Source: Rhodosorus marinus CCMP1338
Taxonomy: Eukaryota > Plantae > Rhodophyta
NCBI GenBank assembly: GCA_029953675.1
Contig: JAMWBK010000002.1
Span: 1,922,001 to 1,986,000, forward strand
Length of the DNA: 64,000 bases
Direction of reading: 5' to 3'
Part shown: positions 29,004 through 50,403 of the stretch, in pieces
Layout: the number at the start of each line of letters is the position of its first letter
How positions within the stretch are numbered: the stretch's first letter is position 1
Notes under the pieces: model-generated
What the model saw: only the letters and a program-made list of their open reading frames with translations
Database searches by the model: none
Told to the model about the DNA's origin: nothing
Program-made: the position numbers and the translations under genes

Positions 29004-29711
29004 TCCTATCACGCCAGCGCTCCCTTTCTCACCAAACAGAACGGCAAAACCTTCTTAAAGCACTGCAGCAAAACAACACCAAGGTTCCAAAAGTCTTCCC
29101 ACTGAGTTGCTTCACGAATTTTCCAACTTGGAGAAGATAATGTGAGTCTGTCGCGAAACGCCCTCGTAATTCACTAAGCAAACTATCTCATCCAGACACA
29201 CTAACAAACCCCGTCAGGTACCTCTCACCCTCCGTCACACAACTCCACATAGAAAAACTTCCATACAGCAAAATCGGAACAAAACAAACCAAATCACCTC
29301 TCTATACCTTCTAGACCAAAACCATGTTACATCGTACTTATCAATCCTTTCAGATCCTCTTCAAAACCTTCAATCAATCGTCACCAAACATTCCCTTTCC
29401 GAACTCGCATCCATTCTCTCTCCATCCTCTCCAACCCCATCCGAGTTCCACTCAATCCATAATATATGCACTATTATAATTTTATATAGCATACGACTGT
29501 GTAAAATATCTAAATATAATTTATTCTTTAATAAAAACATGCGAAACGTACATTTTTAGTTTTGTAATAAAATAAATAAGAAATAAATTTTAGTTCTGAA
29601 TGTACTTTATGGAATATATAAAGTGCAATCATTATGGTCCTTAACGGTAAGAAGGGTTTCGAGCTTTGAAGGAGATGATGGAAAGAGAGATGGATAGAGA
29701 GGAGAGAGAGG

Positions 29712-29716
<5 letters not shown>

Positions 29717-29791
<75 letters not shown>
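29717..29791. repeat. (AG)n microsatellite, ~75 bp
   Basis: Uninterrupted AG dinucleotide run upstream of RAPTOR. Confidence 0.97.
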
Positions 29792-29795
<4 letters not shown>

Positions 29796-29936
29796 AAGAT
29801 GTATTTAAAGGTTTCATTAAGATATAGATGAAATAGTAAGAAGTAGTTTTCTCTTTTGGTAATTCGTTTGTTGTTTTTTTGTGAGGTTTTGGATGTGTGG
29901 GGTGGATTTGGGAGGAGAAAGAGAGTTGTGAGAGTG

Positions 29937-32900: not shown

Positions 32901-35265
32901 TCAAATGTACTACCTGGCAGAAGATGGGCATCGAATTCACCGACCTATAATCCACTCATGTTTCCAAACTCGCCAAAGCAAATGAGCGTTCTCGAGGAAG
33001 TGCTTGCCTTGCTTGCCGGAATCGTTGAGAACGATGCGTCCCCCCTTGTGAGGAGAGAAATCGCGCTCGGGTTAGAGGAGGTTGTAACCGAACGAAAGGC
33101 GGACTTTGCTGCCTTGGCTGAGAGCGGCAGCAGCGAGAGCATTTTACCGGACGCTGCTCAATCGATCATCTCAATACTCTTGATACTGGAGAGCGATCCA
33201 CATCCAATAGTATCAAGCATCACGAGAAGGGCCAACACGGCGGTTAACTTTTTAGGTAGGCTTGGGGCGCGTGCCCCATCCGCATCCAGCATCGACCGGG
33301 CATCCAATGGGTTCAGCTCCCTCTCATAGTGGAAGTTTCCCGCCGGGCTGCCTTTAGGTGATAAGAACAATGCACAGCGGGAGGGGCAAAAGGACAACAC
33401 CAGCGCGGAGCCGCGAAAAGGTAAGTTGTTCCACAAGAACATATTTGAGCTCATACGTTGAGAAGTTATCACAACTGAACTTCCTCGCAAAAATCGGCTC
33501 TTCAGACAACGTTTTCGTTTCAATCTCACACATGCTCGAGGCTGTGCTGAACGGAAAGGGAGACAAGCATGGAGACCAGAGCCACGACTTGGAATCCGTC
33601 TACAACACGGTGCCATTCGTTTCTTCTGGCTCGCTCGAGCTCGTCAACCGCGCCCTGGAGGACACGCCTTCTACTTATGCTATATTTTGCCGATCGGTTC
33701 TGAACCTTCGATATGAGGGTAATGCTAGATATCCAGCCTCATGTCTCTAGAGTGGATGCCTCGGCAAAGTTTTCCTCCGAAGAAGCTGATAACTAGTCTA
33801 TGGAACAGGTCCAGGGAGCTTGGAGCCGTACATAGCTGAGGAGAAGGTAGGGGTAAAATTCACGTCGGCTCGGAAACAGCTCTTTGAGTCGGACATGAAG
33901 AGCCGTTGGACAACGGAGACGGAGGATAAGCTTCCAGCAAACCTACGGGAGGTAAGCAACCCGCGATGGCCCCGTTGGAAAGAGGACTTGCGTTTTGTGG
34001 CTTGATCTGACTACTGATCTGCACCAATTGGCGCAGGTTTTTAATCTTCGACTGGGCGTCGGTGAACTGTGGTCTTCGGCGTTTCTCCCGATGGATCCCA
34101 TGCTCGTTGCCGGTGACGCATTGGGCGTGGTGTCCATTTGGAACACTGATACCGAGGCTTTGGAGACTAAGTTTGGCATACCGAGGGCGGATCCTCAAGG
34201 AATTTGTGGTATCACTTCTCTGTGCGTTTTAGAAGGAAACATTGAGTCGCCGATCATTGCTGCTGGTGCCGGCGACGGGGTAGCTAGCATTTGGACAAGA
34301 AGAGGTAATTTAAGGCCGAAAAGGAATGAGCTTGCTGGTCTATTCGCGAGTGGGGCTGCGCCGGCTTGAGACTGCCCTCGGGATGCTTACAATCCCCTCC
34401 CAAAACTTTTGCAACAGGTTCCCGGGAAGAAGAACGGATCGTTTCTATCTGGAATGCCTCGGGTTCGATGGAATGGAGTCTGACATCCTTGAACTCTGGC
34501 CAGCAACGTACTGCTCATGGACTGAAGATGAGTTGGAACCCACATAGGCTACAACTGGTCGCGGCCGGATGTGAGGGGGGCATTCTTCGCCTGTGGAACG
34601 TCGCGTCTGAAATCTGCGGAGGGTCAATTCGGGCGTTTACTGGTGAAAGCGTTACGGCGTTGGATACCCGTATAAGCACTTGTGCAGTTGGGGGTACGTC
34701 CGGCACGGTGAGCTTGGTAGACTTGGGAATTCAAGAGCATGGTTCATCATTGGTCTTTGGCTCAAGTGAAACGTCGAATGCACATGGGTCTGCCGTAGTT
34801 GCCGTGCAACAGCAGCAGATAAACGATCATCTGGTAAACGCTACTGGCCATCGCACCTCTCAGCGTTGTATGAACTCGCATGGCTTTTGACTGAATTCGT
34901 TTCTTGTTCGTTGCGTGGTGTAGAGCACTGTCCTTTCTGCCGAAAGACAAGGAACGGTGAAACTTTGGGACGTCCGAAATCCAACCCAGGCGCTAATGGA
35001 ATCGCAACCGCTAATGGGAGAGCTCACGGACATGGTCGCCCACGACACTCTGCCAAACGTCATTGTCGTAAGCGGGAGTAGTGAGGTCAAGCTAATCGAC
35101 AGTCAAGGGAGGACCACTCGTGAACTGCAATACCACGAGGGCTTCCTAAGTCAAAGACTAAGTCCCATAACCTCCCTCTCCCTGCACTCGAGGAAGCCTG
35201 TGCTTGCTGTCGGATGTGCAGACTCTGTGGTCTCCTTGTATGAGTGCACGGACTTTGAAAACTGA
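29937..35265 (+). CDS. RAPTOR: Regulatory-associated protein of TOR (RNC domain, HEAT/armadillo, WD40)
   Basis: [82 protein letters not shown] and [17 protein letters not shown]-terminal WD40 exons end ...LYECTDFEN* at 35265. Confidence 0.96.
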
Positions 35266-35455: not shown

Positions 35456-37733
35456 TTATTGTATATCCGTGTGATTGAAAATTGGTGTGGACCGGAGCGG
35501 CATCGAACAGTACGGGCACCTCAGCTTGTCTGGCAACCAGTCAAATTCTTGACCTATTTGGTATATGGCCTCCGCGTCAGAGCGACACCCTATGCAGCTT
35601 CTCCCTACAGTTGTACGGAGAGGCAGAAGTGTGAGAACGCACCATCTGACCACAAGGGTGCTGCAGCTGCTGCAGACTCCGGTGTCGTTTTCTATGGGGC
35701 TCTTGCAGCACGAGCTCGTAAATGGTTTTGCTAGCCGCTGGTCCGTCCTCTGCATGGCCTGTTTGCCCAACTCCGCATTTGTTCCCGAAACGATTGACGA
35801 CATCCGCATAATGGACATCTGTTCCTTTTCACTCAGCTCACTCTCTCCGCCATCGCAAAGCTTCTTGAGCGCGGATTCGCAGTAGGCCAATCGCAAAGAC
35901 TTTCTCAGAGCATCCCGGAACTCTGAGACTTTGCTTCCGGCTAGTTGTGCATACCAGTTCGCTATATAGAAACCCGCTTGTTGTCTCCTTCCACCGCCAG
36001 TGCCTCGTCTCACTTCATCGGACAAGACCTGTCACCGCATAGTTCGCAGAGGTAATTCTCAATTAGTAACGAATTTGTCAGTCTACCAAAACAATACAAT
36101 CCTCCCCGCCATGGCCACTTTCACTCATCTAAAGGTGCTCTGACGATTCAGCTGCTTCCAGTCGCCGTTTCTCTTTTTCCGCACCTTGGATGGCGATGAG
36201 AGAGGAGTGAAAGCTATTATTTTGCGAGAAGATACCTGTGCAAGTGCATTTTCGTCCGAAAACGAGACGGCGTGGAGAACCTGCGCCAGGTCCCACATTG
36301 CGATTGGAAGGTTTTCGTCGATTGAATCGGCAAACTTAAGGCTTCGTGAAACGAGAGCGGCTTCATCCCTCTGATCATGGCTACAGCAGTCAGCATACCC
36401 CCGGAGAAAAAGGACGAAAAGTGAAGAAAAAGCAGAAGCAGAACCCAGGTGAGAGAATCTTGATTTCGGCCTCAAAATTTGACATTTGCGTACCTGGGAC
36501 GACCTACCAGCACTGCAGATCTAGGAGTCACAGTCTGGAATTTAGCTTTGCCTGCGTCGTTTCCATCGGTCTTACCGGCTGCGGCACCTCCTTGTGTGCT
36601 TTCCAGGACCGCCAGCAAAAGTCCATTGGGGGACCAGCTCAATGCAAATATTGGACGTTCCAGGTTAACCTCCCTCAGCACATGAATTTTAGTGATCTGT
36701 GGTAGCGACCAGAAGGAAAAAACTCGTCTGTTTAGTTCTCGCCAGCAACACAGCTTGCCGAGCATTTGATCCTTCCACAAACCTGCTTCTGAGTGCTCCA
36801 CAAGTAGATCGATCCATCGCAGCTCGATGTGGCGCATGTTTCATCAGAAACGGAGAATCCCATGTCGGTGACGAGCCACCTGTGCGCCTGTATAACTGAA
36901 ACGTTGCCAATGAGCTCGTAACCCTCCGCTTTTCTCACCATGCTCATTACACCAAATCCACTTCCAGCAATAAATCCTATCCTCAGCGTGTCCCGTCTGT
37001 CGATTGGCTGGTAGACCCTTATGGTCGCAATATTCCCAAAGGTGTCTGCCTCAGCACAGAAGAGCTGGTTCTTCTTATCACTGGTCCCATCACCCAGCTT
37101 CAGAACCTGCACGGTGCCATTAGCCCGGGCGATCGCGAGCTCTGCAAAGTTCTTGTCTGAGGGGCGCCGATGACGAGGTAGGAAACATACAGCTGTGATT
37201 CTGTCCAGTGCGATCGAATTGTCGAAGACCGGGGCATGAGTCCGAGAAGGACTCCACAAGCACCAGCTCAGAACTGACTCGGATGCAACTGCAATACACG
37301 TGGTGTTCTCATTGATCGCACGCGCCGCGATTGATTCAAGCTGCTCTTCGCCTAGACTGATCTCGTGGCGTGTCCAATTAAATCTCCACGTCGGAAAGTA
37401 CGCCTCCGCGCTATTCTCTTCCTGTACAAACACCGCCGCTCTGAGATCGTCAAGTGCGACTATCATCCGCCACGTTCTCAACCCGGGCACCCATTTTAAT
37501 TCTCCAAACCCACGTGGAGATTTTGTATCTGAATGTGATACCAGAGAATGGTCTACTACACCTGTAGGACCTCTACAAACATTCGTGTAGCGTACAGGAA
37601 GGCAAGACACGGTTCCACAACTTCCGATCACTAACTCGTCCTCGAAACTCCAGTCCAATCCACCTCCCCTCCTGACTTCTCTGATTATACGTCGCCTCCC
37701 AATCCGCTCCATCGCGTCTTCTTCCCATCTCAT
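35456..37733 (-). CDS. TFIIIC subunit 4 (TFIIIC90/Tfc8)-like: N-terminal WD40-type propeller plus C-terminal Cys-rich zinc finger
   Basis: N-terminal GLDWSFEDELVIG and WD-like HRWLVTDMGFS and FALSWSPNG. C-terminal CC..CSSC..RWCVLTLLPL..RSCIGC..DWL..RCPYC resembles the zf-TFIIIC pattern (recognised from memory). Confidence 0.6.
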
Positions 37734-41598: not shown

Positions 41599-44312
41599 CT
41601 AATATGGGACTGGCATCATGAGAGGTGGACATTCGACCTCATGTTCAAGGCCATCTTCCAAGAAAGGCCGAAGTCGTATCGAGTTGATTGCAAAGATAGC
41701 AGCGGCATCGGGGACTTCTTCGCCAACTACCATCAAAGAGTCATTGATCAGGAGAACAAATACAAGACGCGACGTCCGCGGTGGAATCAAGACCCCCGAC
41801 GGACTCCCAGTTGAGTCTTTTCGTTGGGGTGGCCGGTACTGGCGCATGAACGGAGCAGTCACCTAGCAAGAACGCCGATGAGCTCTTCAGGCCCATGTAG
41901 TTCGGTAGAGACGAGCAGGATGTGGTTGTGCTTACCGACAATGAGACAACCTGAGCTTCCTCCTTCGCATTGCTGACCAGGAAGAACTTTGAGGAGCCCT
42001 CTCCAAAGACCTCCAATCTTGCCGATTTGTCTTCACTGTACACAGTTGTCAGCATCTGCATGCTCTTGAGGGATCTCAGAAGAACTCCAGATATGTGCTC
42101 CGTGGGTGTCGAGTCCTCATCTAATCTTTCAACCTCCACCGCCTTCGACGACAATATACTACATCCGGAATAAGATTCTCCTTCAGATGCACAAAAAATC
42201 GTTCGGGCTTCCGCATGATGCATTGACACATACCAAATACTGAGACTAAATCCTGTCGGAGTCTTGGGATCAAATGAAAATGGCCAGATAACATAGTCTT
42301 CTCCAGAATTTTCATAGGAGCTACTCGCCTCGAGCATGACCTCGAAGTGAGCATCCCGGACACACCCTCCATGTACAGTCTTCGTGACTGAAGCTACTTT
42401 CCCTTCCCTCCTCCTGCACAATGCCATACTAATCTGGGCCGATCTGAGGCAGCACCCAGCAAACAACGTAAAAAAAAAAAAAGTTAAGGCGCCTGATGTA
42501 GACTCATGTAGACGTTCAATCTTCGACTACCGCCGACGAAGCTCACCTCAAACTTCGTCCTCTGCTACTCTTTTGTACAAACATAATATAAGCCCAGGCG
42601 TTCTCCGATGCTCTCAGGACCACACACCCACCAAGTCCAACGTTCGGTACGACTGTGGACTTCCAATTCATGTGCGCCTTGCAAACATCCACCAGAGTAA
42701 ATCGGAGCAAGAAGTCAGGGTAACTCATCCAGAAAGTACCATCGTTCTTATCGCCCTTGTTTAACAGTTTTCTCAGCTTAGGCGTCCACATCTGCAGATC
42801 AAAAGTACGACGGATGGACCTGGTTTCAGCAGAATTCAGTGCAGCCCGGCCGTTTGGCATCTGCTACCTCAGAGTTGCCGCCCCATGCACCTTTCCACTC
42901 CCGCTTTCCCCACGGATTGCGGATTCGAAGTACACGAAGGGATCCGTCATCAGCTATATGATCTTCCACGTTATCTTGAGGACGAGGCTGCGAGGTATCG
43001 GCCTACAGAATCACATCGCGGAGATTTTGTTAGCATCTAGCGGTTTTTCTTTCTTCTCCAAGTTCAGTCTCATTCCGCTTCTATGAATCGTTCACCGACG
43101 GTATCCGTTTTCTAGGAAAGTACTCATGCATCTTCGTCTGAATCCCGGGCAGCAGTCCAGTGAGAGTCTTCACCTCGAGGATAGAGTAGGCGTGCATGCC
43201 AACGAGTCCGTCACCACCAGTCGCAGTTGCACATCCCATTGGAAACTGGCTGGATGAGAAAGATACCAGCCTCTCCCAAGTTTCGTTCGAGTCGAAAGTC
43301 GAAGAGGAGAAGGAAATCGTCTCCGTTGGACATGCCGTGAGCTCCAACATCGCTTCAGCTATTTCGCCTCCGGAGATTGACCAGTATGAACCATGTGCTT
43401 TGGCATAGGCCTTCTCAAGGAGAGGAACCCAAAGCTGATCTCTGCTTGTTTGTGAGAAGGCAGGCAGATCCCCTTTCATAGGGAGGTGGTCATCAATGTC
43501 GTAGACTTGCCACTGTCCGTCAATGAACAGTCGGAACGAGTATTTTCCTATGTCTGAAGGCTGTACGTATGTGTTGTTTTTTTCAGTGCTGGCTTCAGCT
43601 CTACAAGCTCTGGAGTTTACAGGCACAGACCGAGACAGGCTTACCTCCTGTGTTAATGCAACTTGGTTTATCAGGTCCGGTCTTTCGGCGAGCACAGCTA
43701 GTGCGGAGAGAAACCAACAGTCCCCAACTGATCCTTGCTTAACGTCCAGGGAACTAAATCCGATCGTAGGTTTCACTAGAGTCCATCCTTTTGACGGGGA
43801 AAACCGTTGCCATCTCATTCCTTTCCCGAAGTTTGACCGCCTCAAGACGTATGGGCCGATTGTGTTCTCAGGCGCCCACATGAAGAACCCGCACTGTCTC
43901 TTTCGGCATCCGTAGAATAGTTTTCCTATACAACAGCGAGAAGACCGAGTGAATAGAGACAGTTTATGCCCCCAACGCATAGGATCCAACTGCAGAGAAG
44001 AACAACGGAAGATGTCAGGCTCATACCCTGGTTTTTACCGTCCTTCCTAACGGTATTCAACCTGGCTTGCATCTTGCAATGGCAGCTCAGAGCTTCAGTT
44101 TTGTTTGCCTGCCGTTCAAACTCTGGGGATGTCTCCAAACCCGATAGTGAGACGCGGGAGGGGGGAAACTCTGGATCAATGAACGTAGGAGAAGCAGGAG
44201 AAGCAGGAGCGCCAACTTCCCCAACAAGCTGCTGGCAGATTGAGATCGGAAGTTCCATCCAGACACTCTCGTCCACCCCATCCGGAACAGGTGGACGTCG
44301 TTGGTCGTCCAT
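41599..44312 (-). CDS. Calpain-family cysteine protease: UBM-like motif + zf-GRF + CysPc (intact C/H/N triad) with PIP-box insert + SOL/calpain-15-like C-terminus
   Basis: PDGVDESVWMELPISICQQL (UBM-like); FIDPEFPP; CHC..A...TVRKDGKNQG|KLFYGC...CGFFMW (zf-GRF); QGSVGDCWFLSAL (Cys 43717-43719); WVPLLEKAYAKAHGSY; HAYSILEV (His 43192-43194); RIRNPWGKREWKGAWG (Asn 42916-42918); DGTFWMSYPDF. Confidence 0.9.
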
Positions 44313-45355: not shown

Positions 45356-46059
45356 CTATAGTGGCCTACCTCGGGCGGTTCGCATAGAGCCGCTCAGGGG
45401 GGAAGCCCCCTCCTTCGCGTGCCGTAACTCATCAATATCGTGGACAGGAGGATTGTACTGCTCCCTGGAAGGTTGTCTTATCGCACGTGCAACTTTGCTT
45501 TCTAGCTCCCCTGAGTCAGCTGATCTCGACGGACGTTGAAGCTCCTCTCGTGGTGAAGACTCAAGATGTCCAACCTCGCTGCTGTGCCTTCCAACTGCGG
45601 ATCTCTTCGAGCTGTAGAGCGAATCCGTCCCGGACTCCTCCAATACCTGCGTCTTTGGGTGCGACGGTTTACCGCCAGCCGAGTTCTTCATAATGTCGTC
45701 TGCAGAGTCGAAAAACTTTCGCTCGTGCTGTAGTGGTAATAAATCAGGAAGACACAAAAGGACGCCGTTTAGCAATTTGTGTATTGTCATGAGTGCCAAG
45801 GATTCCACATAGGCCGTTGAACGAATGACTGAGTGCAGGCCATGGCTTCCCAAGTCTGTGGGGCCTACGTTCAACCTGCCCATTCCTAAATGGAGGTTTT
45901 GGACGCAGTACTAACCAAGCCGTGCATATTCAGGCGTTTCTTCACCAGCAACCTGCGCGCTTCATCTTTTGGTAAGGGACTGCCATATTTAGAGAATTGA
46001 GCCCCTTCAGAAGCCCCGGGCACTTTACTGGGGGACTTCTCATCTGAAACTTGATCCAT
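45356..46059 (-). CDS. ENSA: Endosulfine/ARPP19/Igo1 family PP2A-B55 inhibitor
   Basis: Exon 1 MDQVSDEK...KYGSPLPKDEARRLLVKKRLNMHGL|gttagt, then a ~185-nt intron ending ctacag, then HERKFFDSADDIMKN. This matches the KYG...HER.(Y/F)FDSAD Greatwall-site signature. Confidence 0.85.
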
Positions 46060-49352: not shown

Positions 49353-50403
49353 ATGGATCTTGAATTGTCGTCTTCATCTATAAACGGGGATGAGCAGGCT
49401 AATGTGGAGGTCCTCAAGGCGCAGATCGAGAGCACGATTGAGCTTGACGATGCGTTGCGGGCGTGGTTGACTAATATAACATATGCTAGGTTTCTTCGTA
49501 AGCATTATCTTTTGCCAAGGACATGTTTTCTGACGTCATTTGTACTAGAACGCAGATTTAGCATCGGATTCGAATGTTGAATCGAAGTTACGACTTTTCC
49601 GTCCCGACCTGACCACGATCACTCGGTTTTTGCTAACTTGACTATAGGAGCACGAGATCAAAGTATTTCGAAGTCATACAAAATGCTGAGCAACACCATC
49701 GAGTGGCGAAAAAAGAAATCTCCTGAGAAAGTTGTATGCGTAGCGTGCCAGAAGAATCCGCGCTCCCACTCCCTCCGTGCGATTGGGGTATGCAAGATTG
49801 GGAGACCTGTTTTCTATTCATGCTTTCAAGTAGATAATCGGAACGTCGAAGACAACATTACCCACTGCATTCATCTTCTTGAGAAGGTGTTCGAGCTCGA
49901 GTGTACGACGGAGCAAAACTACATATGGGTGATGGACTTTTCCGGTTTTTCCGCAGCAGATTTGAATCCAAAGTTCTCAGTGAAGGCCCTGAAAATGTTC
50001 CAAAGTCATTACCCGGAGAGGTGAGAGAAAAGCGTTGCTTCTGCCCTCAAGTCAATTGTCAGAGATTTGAGTTCGGCTTGCGGTCCGATTGTTGACAGGT
50101 GTATTCGCTTGTGAATCGAATAGGATGGGGATTGCAGTTCTTTTCGATGCTCCGAGATCGTTCCAGGCTTTGTGGCGCGTTTTGAAGCTGGTAGTTGACA
50201 CGAACACGAAGAAGAAGATGCTGTTCCAAAATCCGGCCCCTGAATATCCAGAATTCGACAAACTCTTCAACCGGGACCTCACCGATCGGCTGGTGCTAGA
50301 AATCAAATCTGCGCGTGAAACGCCTCAACGTGAGTTTTGGTTGGAAGGACCTGTACCACCTATGGAGGACATGAAGATGCACGGTTCCCATTCTGAGGGT
50401 TGA
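49353..50403 (+). CDS. CRAL-TRIO/SEC14-like lipid-binding protein
   Basis: TYARFLR|ARD..ISKSYKML..TIEWRK, GRPVFY, WVMDFSGFS, FQSHYPER|MG..VLFDAPRSFQALWRVLK.VVD.NTKKK. Confidence 0.9.

What the first reader, a model, noticed from the sequence alone, without database searches (positions are those of the whole stretch)
41599..44312. Calpain built like a replication-coupled DNA-protein-crosslink protease (UBM + zf-GRF + PIP-box + intact catalytic triad)
Seen: an N-terminal UBM-like motif (44223-44291), a zf-GRF (43876-44084, split by an intron) inserted just after the FIDPEFPP start of the catalytic domain, an intact Cys/His/Asn triad and a PIP-box. Established: UBMs bind ubiquitin (pol iota, REV1); zf-GRF domains bind ssDNA (APE2, NEIL3, TOP3A); PIP-boxes bind PCNA; SPRTN and FAM111A combine a protease, DNA engagement and PCNA and/or ubiquitin binding to clear protein blocks at forks. 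zf-GRF calpains are known in some protists, but I am not aware of a described function. Inference: a third protease fold, a calpain, may have been recruited convergently to DPC repair or replication-stress proteolysis.
Basis: partly seen in the sequence, partly recalled or inferred. Interest (0 to 1): 0.8.

Follow-up and report, generated by a model that had tools for sequence, protein, structure and literature searches.

The report
PCNA-, ubiquitin- and ssDNA-addressed calpain
This red-alga gene encodes an intact calpain protease carrying a ubiquitin-binding motif, a single-stranded-DNA zinc finger and a PCNA-docking motif, and because relatives across eukaryotes keep the same three address tags it probably cuts proteins at replication forks, a job not yet described for calpains.

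Summary
All four observed features are real. The gene (minus strand, 44312-41599, 8 exons) is Rhodosorus marinus NDN08_007897, 702 aa. It has a calpain core (Pfam 3.6e-64; Cys165/His312/Asn373) and a zf-GRF (4e-12) inserted in a loop of subdomain PC1.

The N-terminal motif is a diverged UBM. A profile of the homologous motif from relatives hits only Pol iota, REV1 and HUWE1 UBMs in the PDB (6e-9).

QTKMHEYF is a PIP-box at the start of a loop inserted between the catalytic His and Asn. In 138 relatives of the same subfamily, a PIP-type motif sits 18 residues after the His in 59% (strict) or 86% (relaxed).

N-terminal ubiquitin binders are exchanged across the family: UBM, or UBA-like including CUE; some members carry UIM or MIU elsewhere. 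A second subfamily rebuilds the set as zf-CCHC, PIP-like motif and UIM in its C-terminal tail. The classical calcium-switch residues are replaced family-wide.

The zf-GRF calpain architecture was already catalogued. I found no mention of the PIP-box, the UBM or a replication role. Targeting to PCNA, ubiquitin and ssDNA is well supported in silico. DNA-protein-crosslink cleavage remains an untested inference.

The parts
41599..44312 (-). Whole gene: 8 exons, 702-aa GRF-calpain (R. marinus NDN08_007897)
   Evidence: My splice model is identical to P0001. All introns are GT-AG.
44223..44291 (-). UBM-type ubiquitin-binding motif, aa 8-30 (PVPDGVDESVWMELPISICQQLV), with a central Leu-Pro
   Evidence: Family profile hits Pol iota, REV1 and HUWE1 UBMs (5.8e-9). 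Leave-out HMM gives E 0.009 at Z=20,000. AlphaFold2 predicts helix-LP-helix at pLDDT 83.5.
44160..44183 (-). FIDPEFPP, the N-terminal strand of the calpain core that precedes the inserted zinc finger
   Evidence: Aligns to YVDPEFPP of calpain-3. The FxDxxFPP...SIDGR consensus precedes the GRF across the family.
43867..44087 (-). zf-GRF zinc ribbon, aa 76-115, interrupted by the intron at 44026-43926
   Evidence: Pfam PF06839, 46.4 bits, E 4.1e-12. Matches NEIL3 GRF in the PDB at 1.4e-8. Cys77, Cys102 and Cys107 are invariant and Cys79 is at least 90% conserved; the GRxF Arg is Lys here.
42678..43836 (-). Calpain protease core PC1-PC2, aa 126-427 (spans introns 2-4)
   Evidence: Pfam PF00648, 217 bits. 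Foldseek matches calpain-1 and calpain-3 cores at target-normalised TM about 0.8.
43717..43719 (-). Catalytic Cys165 (GDCWF)
   Evidence: Invariant in 113 of 113 aligned homologues.
43192..43194 (-). Catalytic His312 (GMHAYS)
   Evidence: Invariant in 113 of 113.
43117..43140 (-). PIP-box QTKMHEYF, aa 330-337, followed by the basic PRKR
   Evidence: Fits Qxx[ILMV]xx[FY][FY]. The same motif lies 18 +/- 0.4 aa after the catalytic His in 87 homologues. Identical in two other Rhodosorus strains.
42943..43152 (-). Inserted loop, aa 326-364, between the His and Asn strands (spans the intron at 43095-43003); the PIP-box is at its start and the rest is variable and low-complexity
   Evidence: With the loop deleted, the sequence aligns straight through to mu-calpain. 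pLDDT drops to 58. Loop length varies from 26 to 139 aa in homologues.
42916..42918 (-). Catalytic Asn373 (RNPWG)
   Evidence: Invariant in 113 of 113.
41743..42662 (-). C-terminal beta-sandwich, aa 433 to about 655 (calpain domain III / CBSW-like; spans introns 5-7)
   Evidence: AlphaFold2 predicts an all-beta region with pLDDT mostly 85-98. Foldseek aligns 588 columns to full-length m-calpain 3BOW. Pfam finds no domain here.

Best explanation
The gene encodes a non-classical calpain addressed to replication forks by three separate modules built into or onto the protease.

- The N-terminal UBM binds ubiquitin. The most likely ligands are mono-ubiquitylated PCNA or a ubiquitylated protein on DNA.
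- The zf-GRF, inserted in catalytic subdomain PC1, binds single-stranded DNA.
- The PIP-box, at the start of a disordered loop inserted in subdomain PC2 beside the catalytic His, docks on PCNA.

Together they would place an intact Cys-His-Asn active site on the front face of PCNA at a primer-template junction. There it would cut proteins that block or are stuck on DNA: DNA-protein crosslinks, trapped enzymes, or ubiquitin-marked replisome and PCNA partners. This is functionally analogous to SPRTN and FAM111A, on a third protease fold.

The classical calcium-switch residues are replaced throughout the family, and the two address modules sit one in each half of the protease core. I therefore infer that joint engagement of ssDNA and PCNA (with ubiquitin) aligns PC1 and PC2 and switches the enzyme on, in place of calcium.

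Shown: the domains, the motifs, their conservation and their positions. Inferred: every binding event, nuclear location, the substrates and the activation mode.
For: Domains and triad.

UBM. A family profile hits only Pol iota, REV1 and HUWE1 UBMs. The leave-out HMM and the helix-LP-helix model agree. The UBM type occurs in Rhodosorus, the chrysophyte Mallomonas, Ectocarpus and chytrid fungi.

PIP-box.
- In 138 same-subfamily (RNPWG) homologues, 81 have a strict and 118 a relaxed PIP motif, always about 18 aa after the catalytic His.
- Among the 87 strict-motif sequences scored, the consensus is G-x-Q-x-K-[VLIM]-T-D-F-F, with Gln in 87 of 87, TD in 35 of 87, and at least two Lys/Arg within 10 residues downstream in 64 of 87.
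- The best PDB matches of the motif profile are PCNA-bound p21 PIP peptides, although the E-values are not significant.
- There is no excess of PIP motifs elsewhere in these proteins.
- Non-GRF calpains have a 19-aa hairpin here and no motif.

Ubiquitin-module exchange. Among the 138 same-subfamily sequences, the N-terminus carries a UBA-like module in 68 (this class includes the CUE domain found in the diatom Amphora, P0111) or a UBM in 20, never both. Some members carry RanBP-type zinc fingers, or a UIM or MIU inside the same loop just after the PIP.

Independent rebuild. The RNPHG subfamily lacks the loop, but 14 of 35 members with long tails have zf-CCHC, then a PIP-like motif, then a UIM in the C-terminal tail. 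Shuffles give 1.7 +/- 1.2.

Calcium switch. Against mu-calpain, R104 becomes A/P/S (never Arg), E185 becomes Gln in 92 of 113, and E333 becomes Thr in 92 of 113.

Precedents. CAPN15 is an experimentally shown ubiquitin-directed calpain (PMC12805371). SPRTN and FAM111A combine a protease with DNA, PCNA and ubiquitin contacts (PMC9240642, PMC7067828, PMC12279946). Established knowledge: zf-GRF domains of APE2, NEIL3 and TOP3A bind ssDNA, and the UBMs of Pol iota and REV1 read ubiquitin on PCNA.
Against: There are no binding, localisation or activity data for any member.

- The Rhodosorus UBM is diverged in helix 2 (SICQQL instead of the acidic DIQxEL), gives no Pfam hit and is only E 0.56 on its own.
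- The PIP motif is rigidly fixed next to a beta-strand and is modelled with moderate confidence (pLDDT about 76-86). It could pack on the domain as a structural element rather than be free to bind PCNA. I could not inspect the model's coordinates.
- No clear nuclear localisation signal is present in the Rhodosorus protein beyond PRKR.
- Calpains typically do limited, regulatory cleavage, not the bulk trimming expected of a crosslink protease.
- The statistical association of PIP with ubiquitin modules is confounded by phylogeny, because the feature classes follow the subclades of the tree.
Confidence: 0.5

Rival explanations
1. The protein is a regulatory, ubiquitin-directed calpain. It makes single limited cuts in specific PCNA-bound or chromatin-bound partners, such as polymerases, licensing factors or PCNA itself, to remodel the replisome. 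It is not a general remover of crosslinked proteins.
For: Limited proteolysis is the usual calpain mode (established knowledge). CAPN15 uses ubiquitin binding to pick one substrate, E-cadherin, and cuts it once. UBM plus PIP is the signature of translesion polymerases that read ubiquitylated PCNA. This reading fits all the motif data equally well.
Against: It does not explain why an ssDNA-binding finger is kept in every member, or why a second ss-nucleic-acid zinc knuckle (zf-CCHC) is added in one subfamily. DNA-dependent positioning is the hallmark of crosslink proteases.
Confidence: 0.25
2. The Q-x-x-[ILMV]-x-x-[FY]-F motif is a structural part of this clade's PC2 domain, or an autoinhibitory plug, and does not bind PCNA. 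The protein would then be a cytosolic ubiquitin-directed calpain like CAPN15, with a zinc finger that binds RNA or another protein.
For: The spacing from the catalytic His is fixed, and Gly plus hydrophobic residues are conserved just before the motif. pLDDT is moderate and a short helix is predicted. The PDB match to PIP peptides is not statistically significant. A 2026 review places zf-GRF calpains in a cytokinesis hypothesis.
Against: - The Gln is found in 85 of 91 ungapped homologues at that alignment column, and the p21-like TD-FF core with a basic tail is typical of PCNA ligands, not of packing helices.
- The motif opens a loop of highly variable length and low complexity.
- The subfamily that lost the loop has an excess of PIP-like motifs in its disordered tail, next to UIMs.
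- UIM or MIU motifs are placed directly after the PIP in some members.
Confidence: 0.15
3. The PIP-box acts mainly as a degron or dosage control. Chromatin-bound PCNA would recruit a CRL4-Cdt2-type ligase to destroy the calpain in S phase or after damage, and the enzyme's real work would lie elsewhere.
For: 35 of 87 motifs carry the TD pair typical of PIP degrons, and Rhodosorus has Arg at +4 (QTKMHEYF-PRKR).
Against: Only 10 of 87 have a basic residue at +4, and only 4 combine TD with +4 basic. Rhodosorus has HE, not TD. This reading explains neither the GRF nor the ubiquitin-binding modules.
Confidence: 0.07

Closest known systems
SPRTN (and yeast Wss1), DNA-dependent metalloproteases that repair DNA-protein crosslinks
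   Same: A protease joined to a DNA-binding module, a PIP-box and a ubiquitin-binding module. Both are predicted to be recruited to stalled forks through PCNA and ubiquitin (PMC9240642, PMC12279946).
   Different: The fold is unrelated (zincin SprT versus papain-like calpain). The ubiquitin reader is a UBZ in SPRTN and a UBM here. DNA is read by ZBD/BR in SPRTN and by a zf-GRF here. No p97 SHP box is evident by eye; I ran no motif scan. Here the DNA and PCNA modules are inserted inside the catalytic domain, not strung on a tail. No activity data exist.
FAM111A, a PCNA-bound trypsin-like protease that clears protein obstacles at forks
   Same: PIP-box plus ssDNA binding plus protease. It is the precedent that a second, unrelated protease fold was recruited to the same task (PMC7067828).
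   Different: FAM111A is a serine protease restricted to some animals, with its PIP at the N-terminus and no UBM. The calpain family here spans at least five eukaryotic supergroups.
CAPN15 / SOL calpains, ubiquitin-directed calpains
   Same: A non-classical calpain whose N-terminal module binds ubiquitin and directs cleavage to a ubiquitylated target (PMC12805371). JGI annotators name several of the relatives 'calpain-15'.
   Different: CAPN15 uses NZF/RanBP-type fingers, has no GRF and no reported PIP-box, and acts on E-cadherin at the membrane. Orthology of the catalytic domains was not tested here.
'UBA_4 ~ zf-GRF ~ peptidase C2' calpains of Ostreococcus and Micromonas, and the 'Zf_GRF-CysPc' calpain of Rhodosorus marinus as catalogued
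   Same: This is the same protein family. Rawlings 2015 (PMC4631099) lists the architecture, and a 2026 review (PMC13413365) names this very Rhodosorus protein.
   Different: Those papers record only the Pfam domains. Neither the PIP-box, the UBM, the exchange of ubiquitin modules nor any DNA-replication role is mentioned. The review proposes cytokinesis.
Y-family polymerases Pol iota and REV1 (UBM plus PCNA-binding motif)
   Same: The same reader pair: a UBM with a central Leu-Pro, and in Pol iota a PIP-box. In those enzymes the pair recognises ubiquitylated PCNA (established knowledge).
   Different: The catalytic activity is a polymerase, not a protease.

Membership tests
Calpain (peptidase family C2) | Peptidase_C2 profile match above the curated threshold | tested here: met
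   PF00648 scores 217.1 bits against a cut-off of 23.8, E 3.6e-64.
Calpain (peptidase family C2) | [quoted passage not shown] | tested here: met
   C165 (GDCWF), H312 (HAYS) and N373 (RNPWG) are invariant in 113 of 113 homologues.
Calpain (peptidase family C2) | Two-lobed PC1/PC2 fold, with or without a beta-sandwich domain III | tested here: met
   The AlphaFold2 model has pLDDT 82. Foldseek matches 3BOW m-calpain over 588 columns at E 2.4e-26, and calpain-3 cores at target-normalised TM up to 0.82.
Calpain (peptidase family C2) | Classical calcium-switch residues (mu-calpain R104, D106, E185, E302, D309, D331, E333; residue list recalled from the mu-calpain core structure paper) | tested here: not met
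   D156, E379 and D406 are kept. R104 becomes Ser, E185 becomes Gln, D309 becomes Gly and E333 becomes Thr. The same replacements occur family-wide. This does not affect family membership; many non-classical calpains differ here.
zf-GRF (PF06839) | Profile match above threshold, four zinc ligands, and the GRxF and FFxW motifs | tested here: met
   46.4 bits against a cut-off of 25.9. The motif reads C77-x-C79...G-K-L-F-Y-G-C102...C107-G-F-F-M-W, with Lys in place of the Arg found in 109 of 113 homologues. NEIL3 GRF matches at 1.4e-8.
zf-GRF (PF06839) | Binds single-stranded DNA | not testable with these tools
   Inferred from APE2, NEIL3 and TOP3A (established knowledge).
UBM (ubiquitin-binding motif of Pol iota, REV1 and HUWE1) | Sequence match to known UBMs | tested here: inconclusive
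   The single sequence gives no Pfam hit and E 0.56 against Pol iota UBM1. An HMM of four known UBMs gives E 0.26 at Z=20,000. However, the family profile gives 5.8e-9 to Pol iota, and also hits REV1 and HUWE1, and the leave-out family HMM gives E 0.009.
UBM (ubiquitin-binding motif of Pol iota, REV1 and HUWE1) | Helix-turn-helix with an invariant central Leu-Pro | tested here: met
   L21-P22 is invariant in 18 of 18 aligned motifs. AlphaFold2 predicts helices at positions 11-16 and 19-28 of the 34-residue segment (protein aa 14-19 and 22-31), flanking the LP, at pLDDT 83.5.
UBM (ubiquitin-binding motif of Pol iota, REV1 and HUWE1) | Binds ubiquitin | not testable with these tools
   Needs NMR or a pull-down.
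PIP-box (PCNA-interacting peptide) | Q-x-x-[ILM]-x-x-[FY]-[FY] consensus | tested here: met
   QTKMHEYF at aa 330-337.
PIP-box (PCNA-interacting peptide) | Conserved in orthologues while the surroundings drift | tested here: met
   81 strict and 118 relaxed matches among 138 sequences, at a fixed offset, with a downstream loop of variable length and sequence. The motif is identical in three Rhodosorus strains while the following loop differs.
PIP-box (PCNA-interacting peptide) | Lies in an accessible, flexible segment | tested here: inconclusive
   The segment is an insertion at a hairpin tip. pLDDT is 76 over the motif and 58 just after it, with a short helix at 333-336.
PIP-box (PCNA-interacting peptide) | Binds PCNA | not testable with these tools
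SPRTN/Wss1-type DNA-protein-crosslink protease (functional class) | Homology to the SprT/WLM zincin domain | tested here: not met
   Only calpain and GRF domains were found. Any relation is analogy, not membership.
SPRTN/Wss1-type DNA-protein-crosslink protease (functional class) | DNA-dependent proteolysis of crosslinked proteins, and damage sensitivity of mutants | not testable with these tools
   Experimental.
SOL / CAPN15 calpains | N-terminal RanBP2/NZF zinc fingers and a SOL-homology C-terminal domain | tested here: not met
   There is no RanBP finger in the Rhodosorus protein, although a few relatives have one. The C-terminal domain resembles calpain domain III.

The most novel reading that the evidence does not exclude
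GRF-calpains would be an ancient, widely distributed class of replication-coupled protease. They are found in red and green algae, stramenopiles, alveolates, rhizarians, euglenids and chytrid fungi.

In this reading the calpain's two catalytic lobes are each fitted with a fork-recognition module: zf-GRF for ssDNA in PC1, and a PIP-box for PCNA in PC2. Coincident binding at a stalled fork, reinforced by ubiquitin, would replace calcium as the switch that assembles the active site. The enzyme would then remove DNA-protein crosslinks or other protein roadblocks. This would be a third independent protease fold recruited to the task solved by SPRTN/Wss1 and FAM111A.
Probability: 0.3. Interest if true: 0.9.

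Novelty: new variant of a known kind. Interest (0 to 1): 0.78.

Why it matters
Protease-based repair of protein blocks on DNA is known from a few unrelated enzymes: SPRTN/Wss1, FAM111A, DDI1/2 and GCNA. How most eukaryotic lineages handle such blocks is poorly mapped.

A calpain carrying conserved PCNA, ubiquitin and ssDNA address tags would add a new protease fold to that list. It would give the widespread but uncharacterised zf-GRF calpains a testable job. It would also extend the recent finding that a calpain (CAPN15) can be ubiquitin-directed.

The prediction that ligand binding to modules in the two catalytic lobes replaces the calcium switch is a concrete, testable idea about calpain activation.

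The family occurs in genetically tractable organisms, including Ostreococcus, diatoms and chytrids, so the hypothesis can be tested directly.

Tried and rejected
1. Pfam scans of the N-terminal 43 aa, of the PIP loop and of the C-terminal 276 aa gave no hits at E up to 10. The UBM had to be established through a family profile instead.

2. Foldseek with the 34-residue UBM model gave only meaningless matches (E above 7). The segment is too short for the method.

3. The PIP-loop profile against PDB sequences put p21 and another PCNA-bound PIP peptide on top, but at E 0.07-1, which is not significant. I use it as a hint only.

4. An alternative donor site at 43173 (GAG|GTGAAG) would splice the PIP-box out. 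I rejected it because both transcript-derived Rhodosorus proteins contain the segment.

5. A different C-terminus is suggested by transcript protein P0002, which reads through intron 7 and stops near 41741. I rejected it as intron retention. Homologue P0106 aligns to the annotated last exon (GVFVPPQSSRVLLILV against GVLIPPRTSRLVFVLL), and AlphaFold2 predicts confident strands there. P0003 likewise retains intron 4.

6. The canonical PIP-degron reading is weakened: a basic residue at +4 occurs in only 10 of 87 motifs.

7. The 2026 review states that all Plasmodium species share the Zf-GRF-CysPc layout. Its own table lists CBSW for Plasmodium, and the Pf-calpain paper mentions no zinc finger. 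I did not use this as evidence for nuclear localisation.

8. Whether Rhodosorus lacks SPRTN or Wss1 could not be addressed, because no searchable Rhodosorus proteome or genome is available in these tools.

9. No tRNA genes and no Rfam families were found in the window.
Full report
**What is there**

The window is eukaryotic DNA at about 49% G+C. On the minus strand between 44312 and 41599, eight exons with GT-AG introns encode a 702-aa protein. It is identical to the NCBI entry 'hypothetical protein NDN08_007897 [Rhodosorus marinus]', a unicellular red alga.

Pfam finds Peptidase_C2 at aa 126-427 (E 3.6e-64) and Zn_ribbon_GRF at aa 76-115 (E 4.1e-12). The first in-frame ATG is at 44312, and the two transcript-derived Rhodosorus proteins P0002 and P0003 start at the same place.

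**Gene model checks**

The GRF is split by the 101-nt intron at 44026-43926, and the transcript proteins read straight across it.

P0002 reads through intron 7 and P0003 reads through intron 4. Both are intron retentions. A more distant homologue, P0106, aligns to the annotated last exon, and AlphaFold2 predicts confident strands there.

**Catalytic domain**

Cys165, His312 and Asn373 occupy columns that are invariant in 113 aligned homologues. The AlphaFold2 model (mean pLDDT 82, pTM 0.82) matches calpain cores. Over 588 columns it matches full-length m-calpain, so aa 433 to about 655 form a domain-III-like beta-sandwich that Pfam does not detect.

FIDPEFPP (aa 44-51) aligns with the YVDPEFPP strand that opens the calpain-3 core, and the profile match resumes at aa 126. 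The zinc finger with its linkers is therefore an insertion in a surface loop of subdomain PC1. The same order, FxDxxFPP...SIDGR, then GRF, then WxRF, is the family consensus. The finger also matches the NEIL3 GRF domains in the PDB (1.4e-8).

**The UBM**

On its own the Rhodosorus motif (PVPDGVDESVWMELPISICQQLV) is weak. Pfam gives nothing. phmmer against the PDB gives E 0.56, although the only hits are Pol iota UBM1.

The same motif recurs in front of the calpain core in relatives, with consensus P-x-G-[IV]-D-x-x-V-W-x-x-L-P-x-D-I-x-x-E-L. These include the chrysophyte Mallomonas, Ectocarpus, several uncultured lineages and chytrid fungi, which carry two copies.
- A profile of 18 such segments hits only UBMs of Pol iota, REV1 and HUWE1 below E 0.001 (best 5.8e-9).
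- A profile built without the Rhodosorus sequences still finds aa 7-23 at E 0.009 for a 20,000-protein search space.
- AlphaFold2 with this focused alignment gives helix, Leu-Pro turn, helix at pLDDT 83.5.

I conclude it is a genuine UBM with a diverged second helix.

**The PIP-box**

QTKMHEYF (aa 330-337) begins a loop inserted at the tip of the hairpin between the His and Asn strands. When I removed aa 329-362, the sequence aligned straight through to mu-calpain.

One match in one protein means little, so I tested conservation in 223 homologues. These were 120 from the word-index search and 103 further representatives from the exhaustive search, which found 989 calpains at E up to 1e-30.

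GRF-calpains fall into two subfamilies.
- **RNPWG subfamily (138 sequences, including Rhodosorus).** 81 have a strict and 118 a relaxed PIP motif, always 18 +/- 0.4 residues after the catalytic His.
- **Motif consensus (the 87 strict-motif sequences scored).** [LV]-V-G-E-Q-x-K-[VLIM]-T-D-F-F. Gln is present in 87 of 87 and the p21-like TD pair in 35. The motif is followed by a low-complexity stretch with at least two Lys/Arg within 10 residues in 64.
- **Loop variability.** The downstream loop ranges from 26 to 139 residues.
- **Specificity.** There is no excess of PIP motifs elsewhere in these proteins (10 observed, 12.7 expected). Non-GRF calpains have a 19-residue hairpin here.
- **PDB comparison.** The motif profile's best matches are PCNA-bound p21 PIP peptides, though not significantly.
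- **Within Rhodosorus.** The PIP and its PRKR tail are identical in three strains while the rest of the loop varies.

**Ubiquitin binding as a family theme**

In the RNPWG subfamily the N-terminus carries either a UBA-like three-helix module (68 sequences; Pfam UBA_4, and CUE in a diatom) or UBMs (20 sequences), never both. A few members have RanBP-type fingers. Several place a UIM or MIU directly after the PIP in the same loop.

The RNPHG subfamily (44 sequences, dinoflagellate-like) lacks the loop and the N-terminal module. It has a C-terminal zf-CCHC in 16 and UIMs in about 20. In addition, 14 of 35 members with long tails carry a PIP-like motif between the knuckle and the UIM, against 1.7 +/- 1.2 in shuffles.

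The combination of ss-nucleic-acid finger, PCNA motif and ubiquitin binder is therefore kept in two different physical arrangements. That argues for function rather than chance or pure structure.

A rough neighbour-joining tree shows that these classes follow ancient subclades. Brown algae have both a UBM-type and a UBA-type paralogue. The co-occurrence counts are consequently not independent observations.

**Activation**

I aligned the protein to mu-calpain and checked the calcium-switch positions, which I list from memory of the mu-calpain core structure paper. R104 is never Arg in the family. E185 is Gln in 92 of 113 and E333 is Thr in 92 of 113. D106, E302 and D331 are mostly kept.

The GRF sits in PC1 and the PIP in PC2. 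From this I infer that coincident ssDNA and PCNA binding may align the two lobes. This is a hypothesis, not a result.

**Comparison with the literature**

The architecture 'UBA_4 ~ zf-GRF ~ pC2' is listed for Ostreococcus and Micromonas (PMC4631099). A 2026 review names the Rhodosorus Zf-GRF-CysPc calpain and folds it into a cytokinesis hypothesis (PMC13413365).

Searches combining calpain with zf-GRF, PIP-box/PCNA, DNA-protein crosslink or SPRTN found no paper that links a calpain to PCNA docking or crosslink repair.

CAPN15 was recently shown to be a ubiquitin-directed calpain (PMC12805371). SPRTN and FAM111A supply the functional template.

**Verdict**

The targeting logic (ubiquitin plus PCNA plus ssDNA) is strongly supported by comparative evidence. 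The substrate class and the activation mode remain inferences.

The domain family is known. The PIP-box, the UBM and the replication-fork reading appear to be new.

Noticed in passing
Homologues P0035, P0061, P0068, P0072, P0118, P0140, P0183, P0191, P0197, P0214 and others (C-terminal tails, about aa 700-1000): The RNPHG subfamily of GRF-calpains lacks the PIP loop. Its C-terminal tail carries zf-CCHC, then a PIP-like motif (for example GRQQALSSWLK), then a UIM. 14 of 35 members with long tails have the motif, against 1.7 expected by shuffling.
   Followed up: partly
Homologues P0084, P0100 (UIM) and P0029, P0066, P0070 (MIU-like), inside the His-Asn loop: Some relatives place a UIM (EEQQIEHAIRMSLAQ) or an inverted UIM (DEMLALALQREE) directly after the PIP-box in the same inserted loop. 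This tandem of PCNA and ubiquitin readers resembles the one seen in translesion polymerases and SPRTN.
   Followed up: partly
window 41863-41935 (intron 7) and 42792-42867 (intron 4): Transcript-derived proteins from other Rhodosorus strains retain these introns. P0002 reads through intron 7 to a stop near 41741, and P0003 reads into intron 4. Intron retention therefore seems common for this gene.
   Followed up: yes
Family-wide, aligned to window codons for S154, Q231, G386 and T408: The residues that form the calcium switch of classical calpains (R104, E185, E333) are replaced in nearly all GRF-calpains. This suggests a different activation trigger.
   Followed up: partly
Homologues P0018 (Ectocarpus fasciculatus, UBM type), P0096 (Ectocarpus sp.) and P0088 (Pylaiella), both UBA type: Brown algae appear to carry two GRF-calpain paralogues with different ubiquitin-binding modules. 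This points to an old duplication.
   Followed up: no
window 45359-45883 (minus strand), the gene just upstream of the calpain: An ORF with a weak endosulfine/ARPP-19 match (19 bits, below the cut-off) contains KFFDSADD. This resembles the FDSGDY site of these mitotic PP2A-B55 inhibitors.
   Followed up: no
window 41641-41814 (plus strand): A 57-codon ATG ORF lies antisense to the calpain's last exon and has no Pfam match. It overlaps the poorly modelled C-terminal tail (aa 655-702) of the calpain, which has no support from homologues.
   Followed up: partly
window 29684-29799: An (AG)n microsatellite of about 58 copies.
   Followed up: no
window 49638-50021 (plus), 34366-34887 (plus), 36735-37733 (minus): Other neighbouring ORFs: a CRAL/TRIO (Sec14-like) domain fragment (E 1.7e-8) and two weak WD40/beta-propeller fragments. 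None has an obvious link to the calpain.
   Followed up: no
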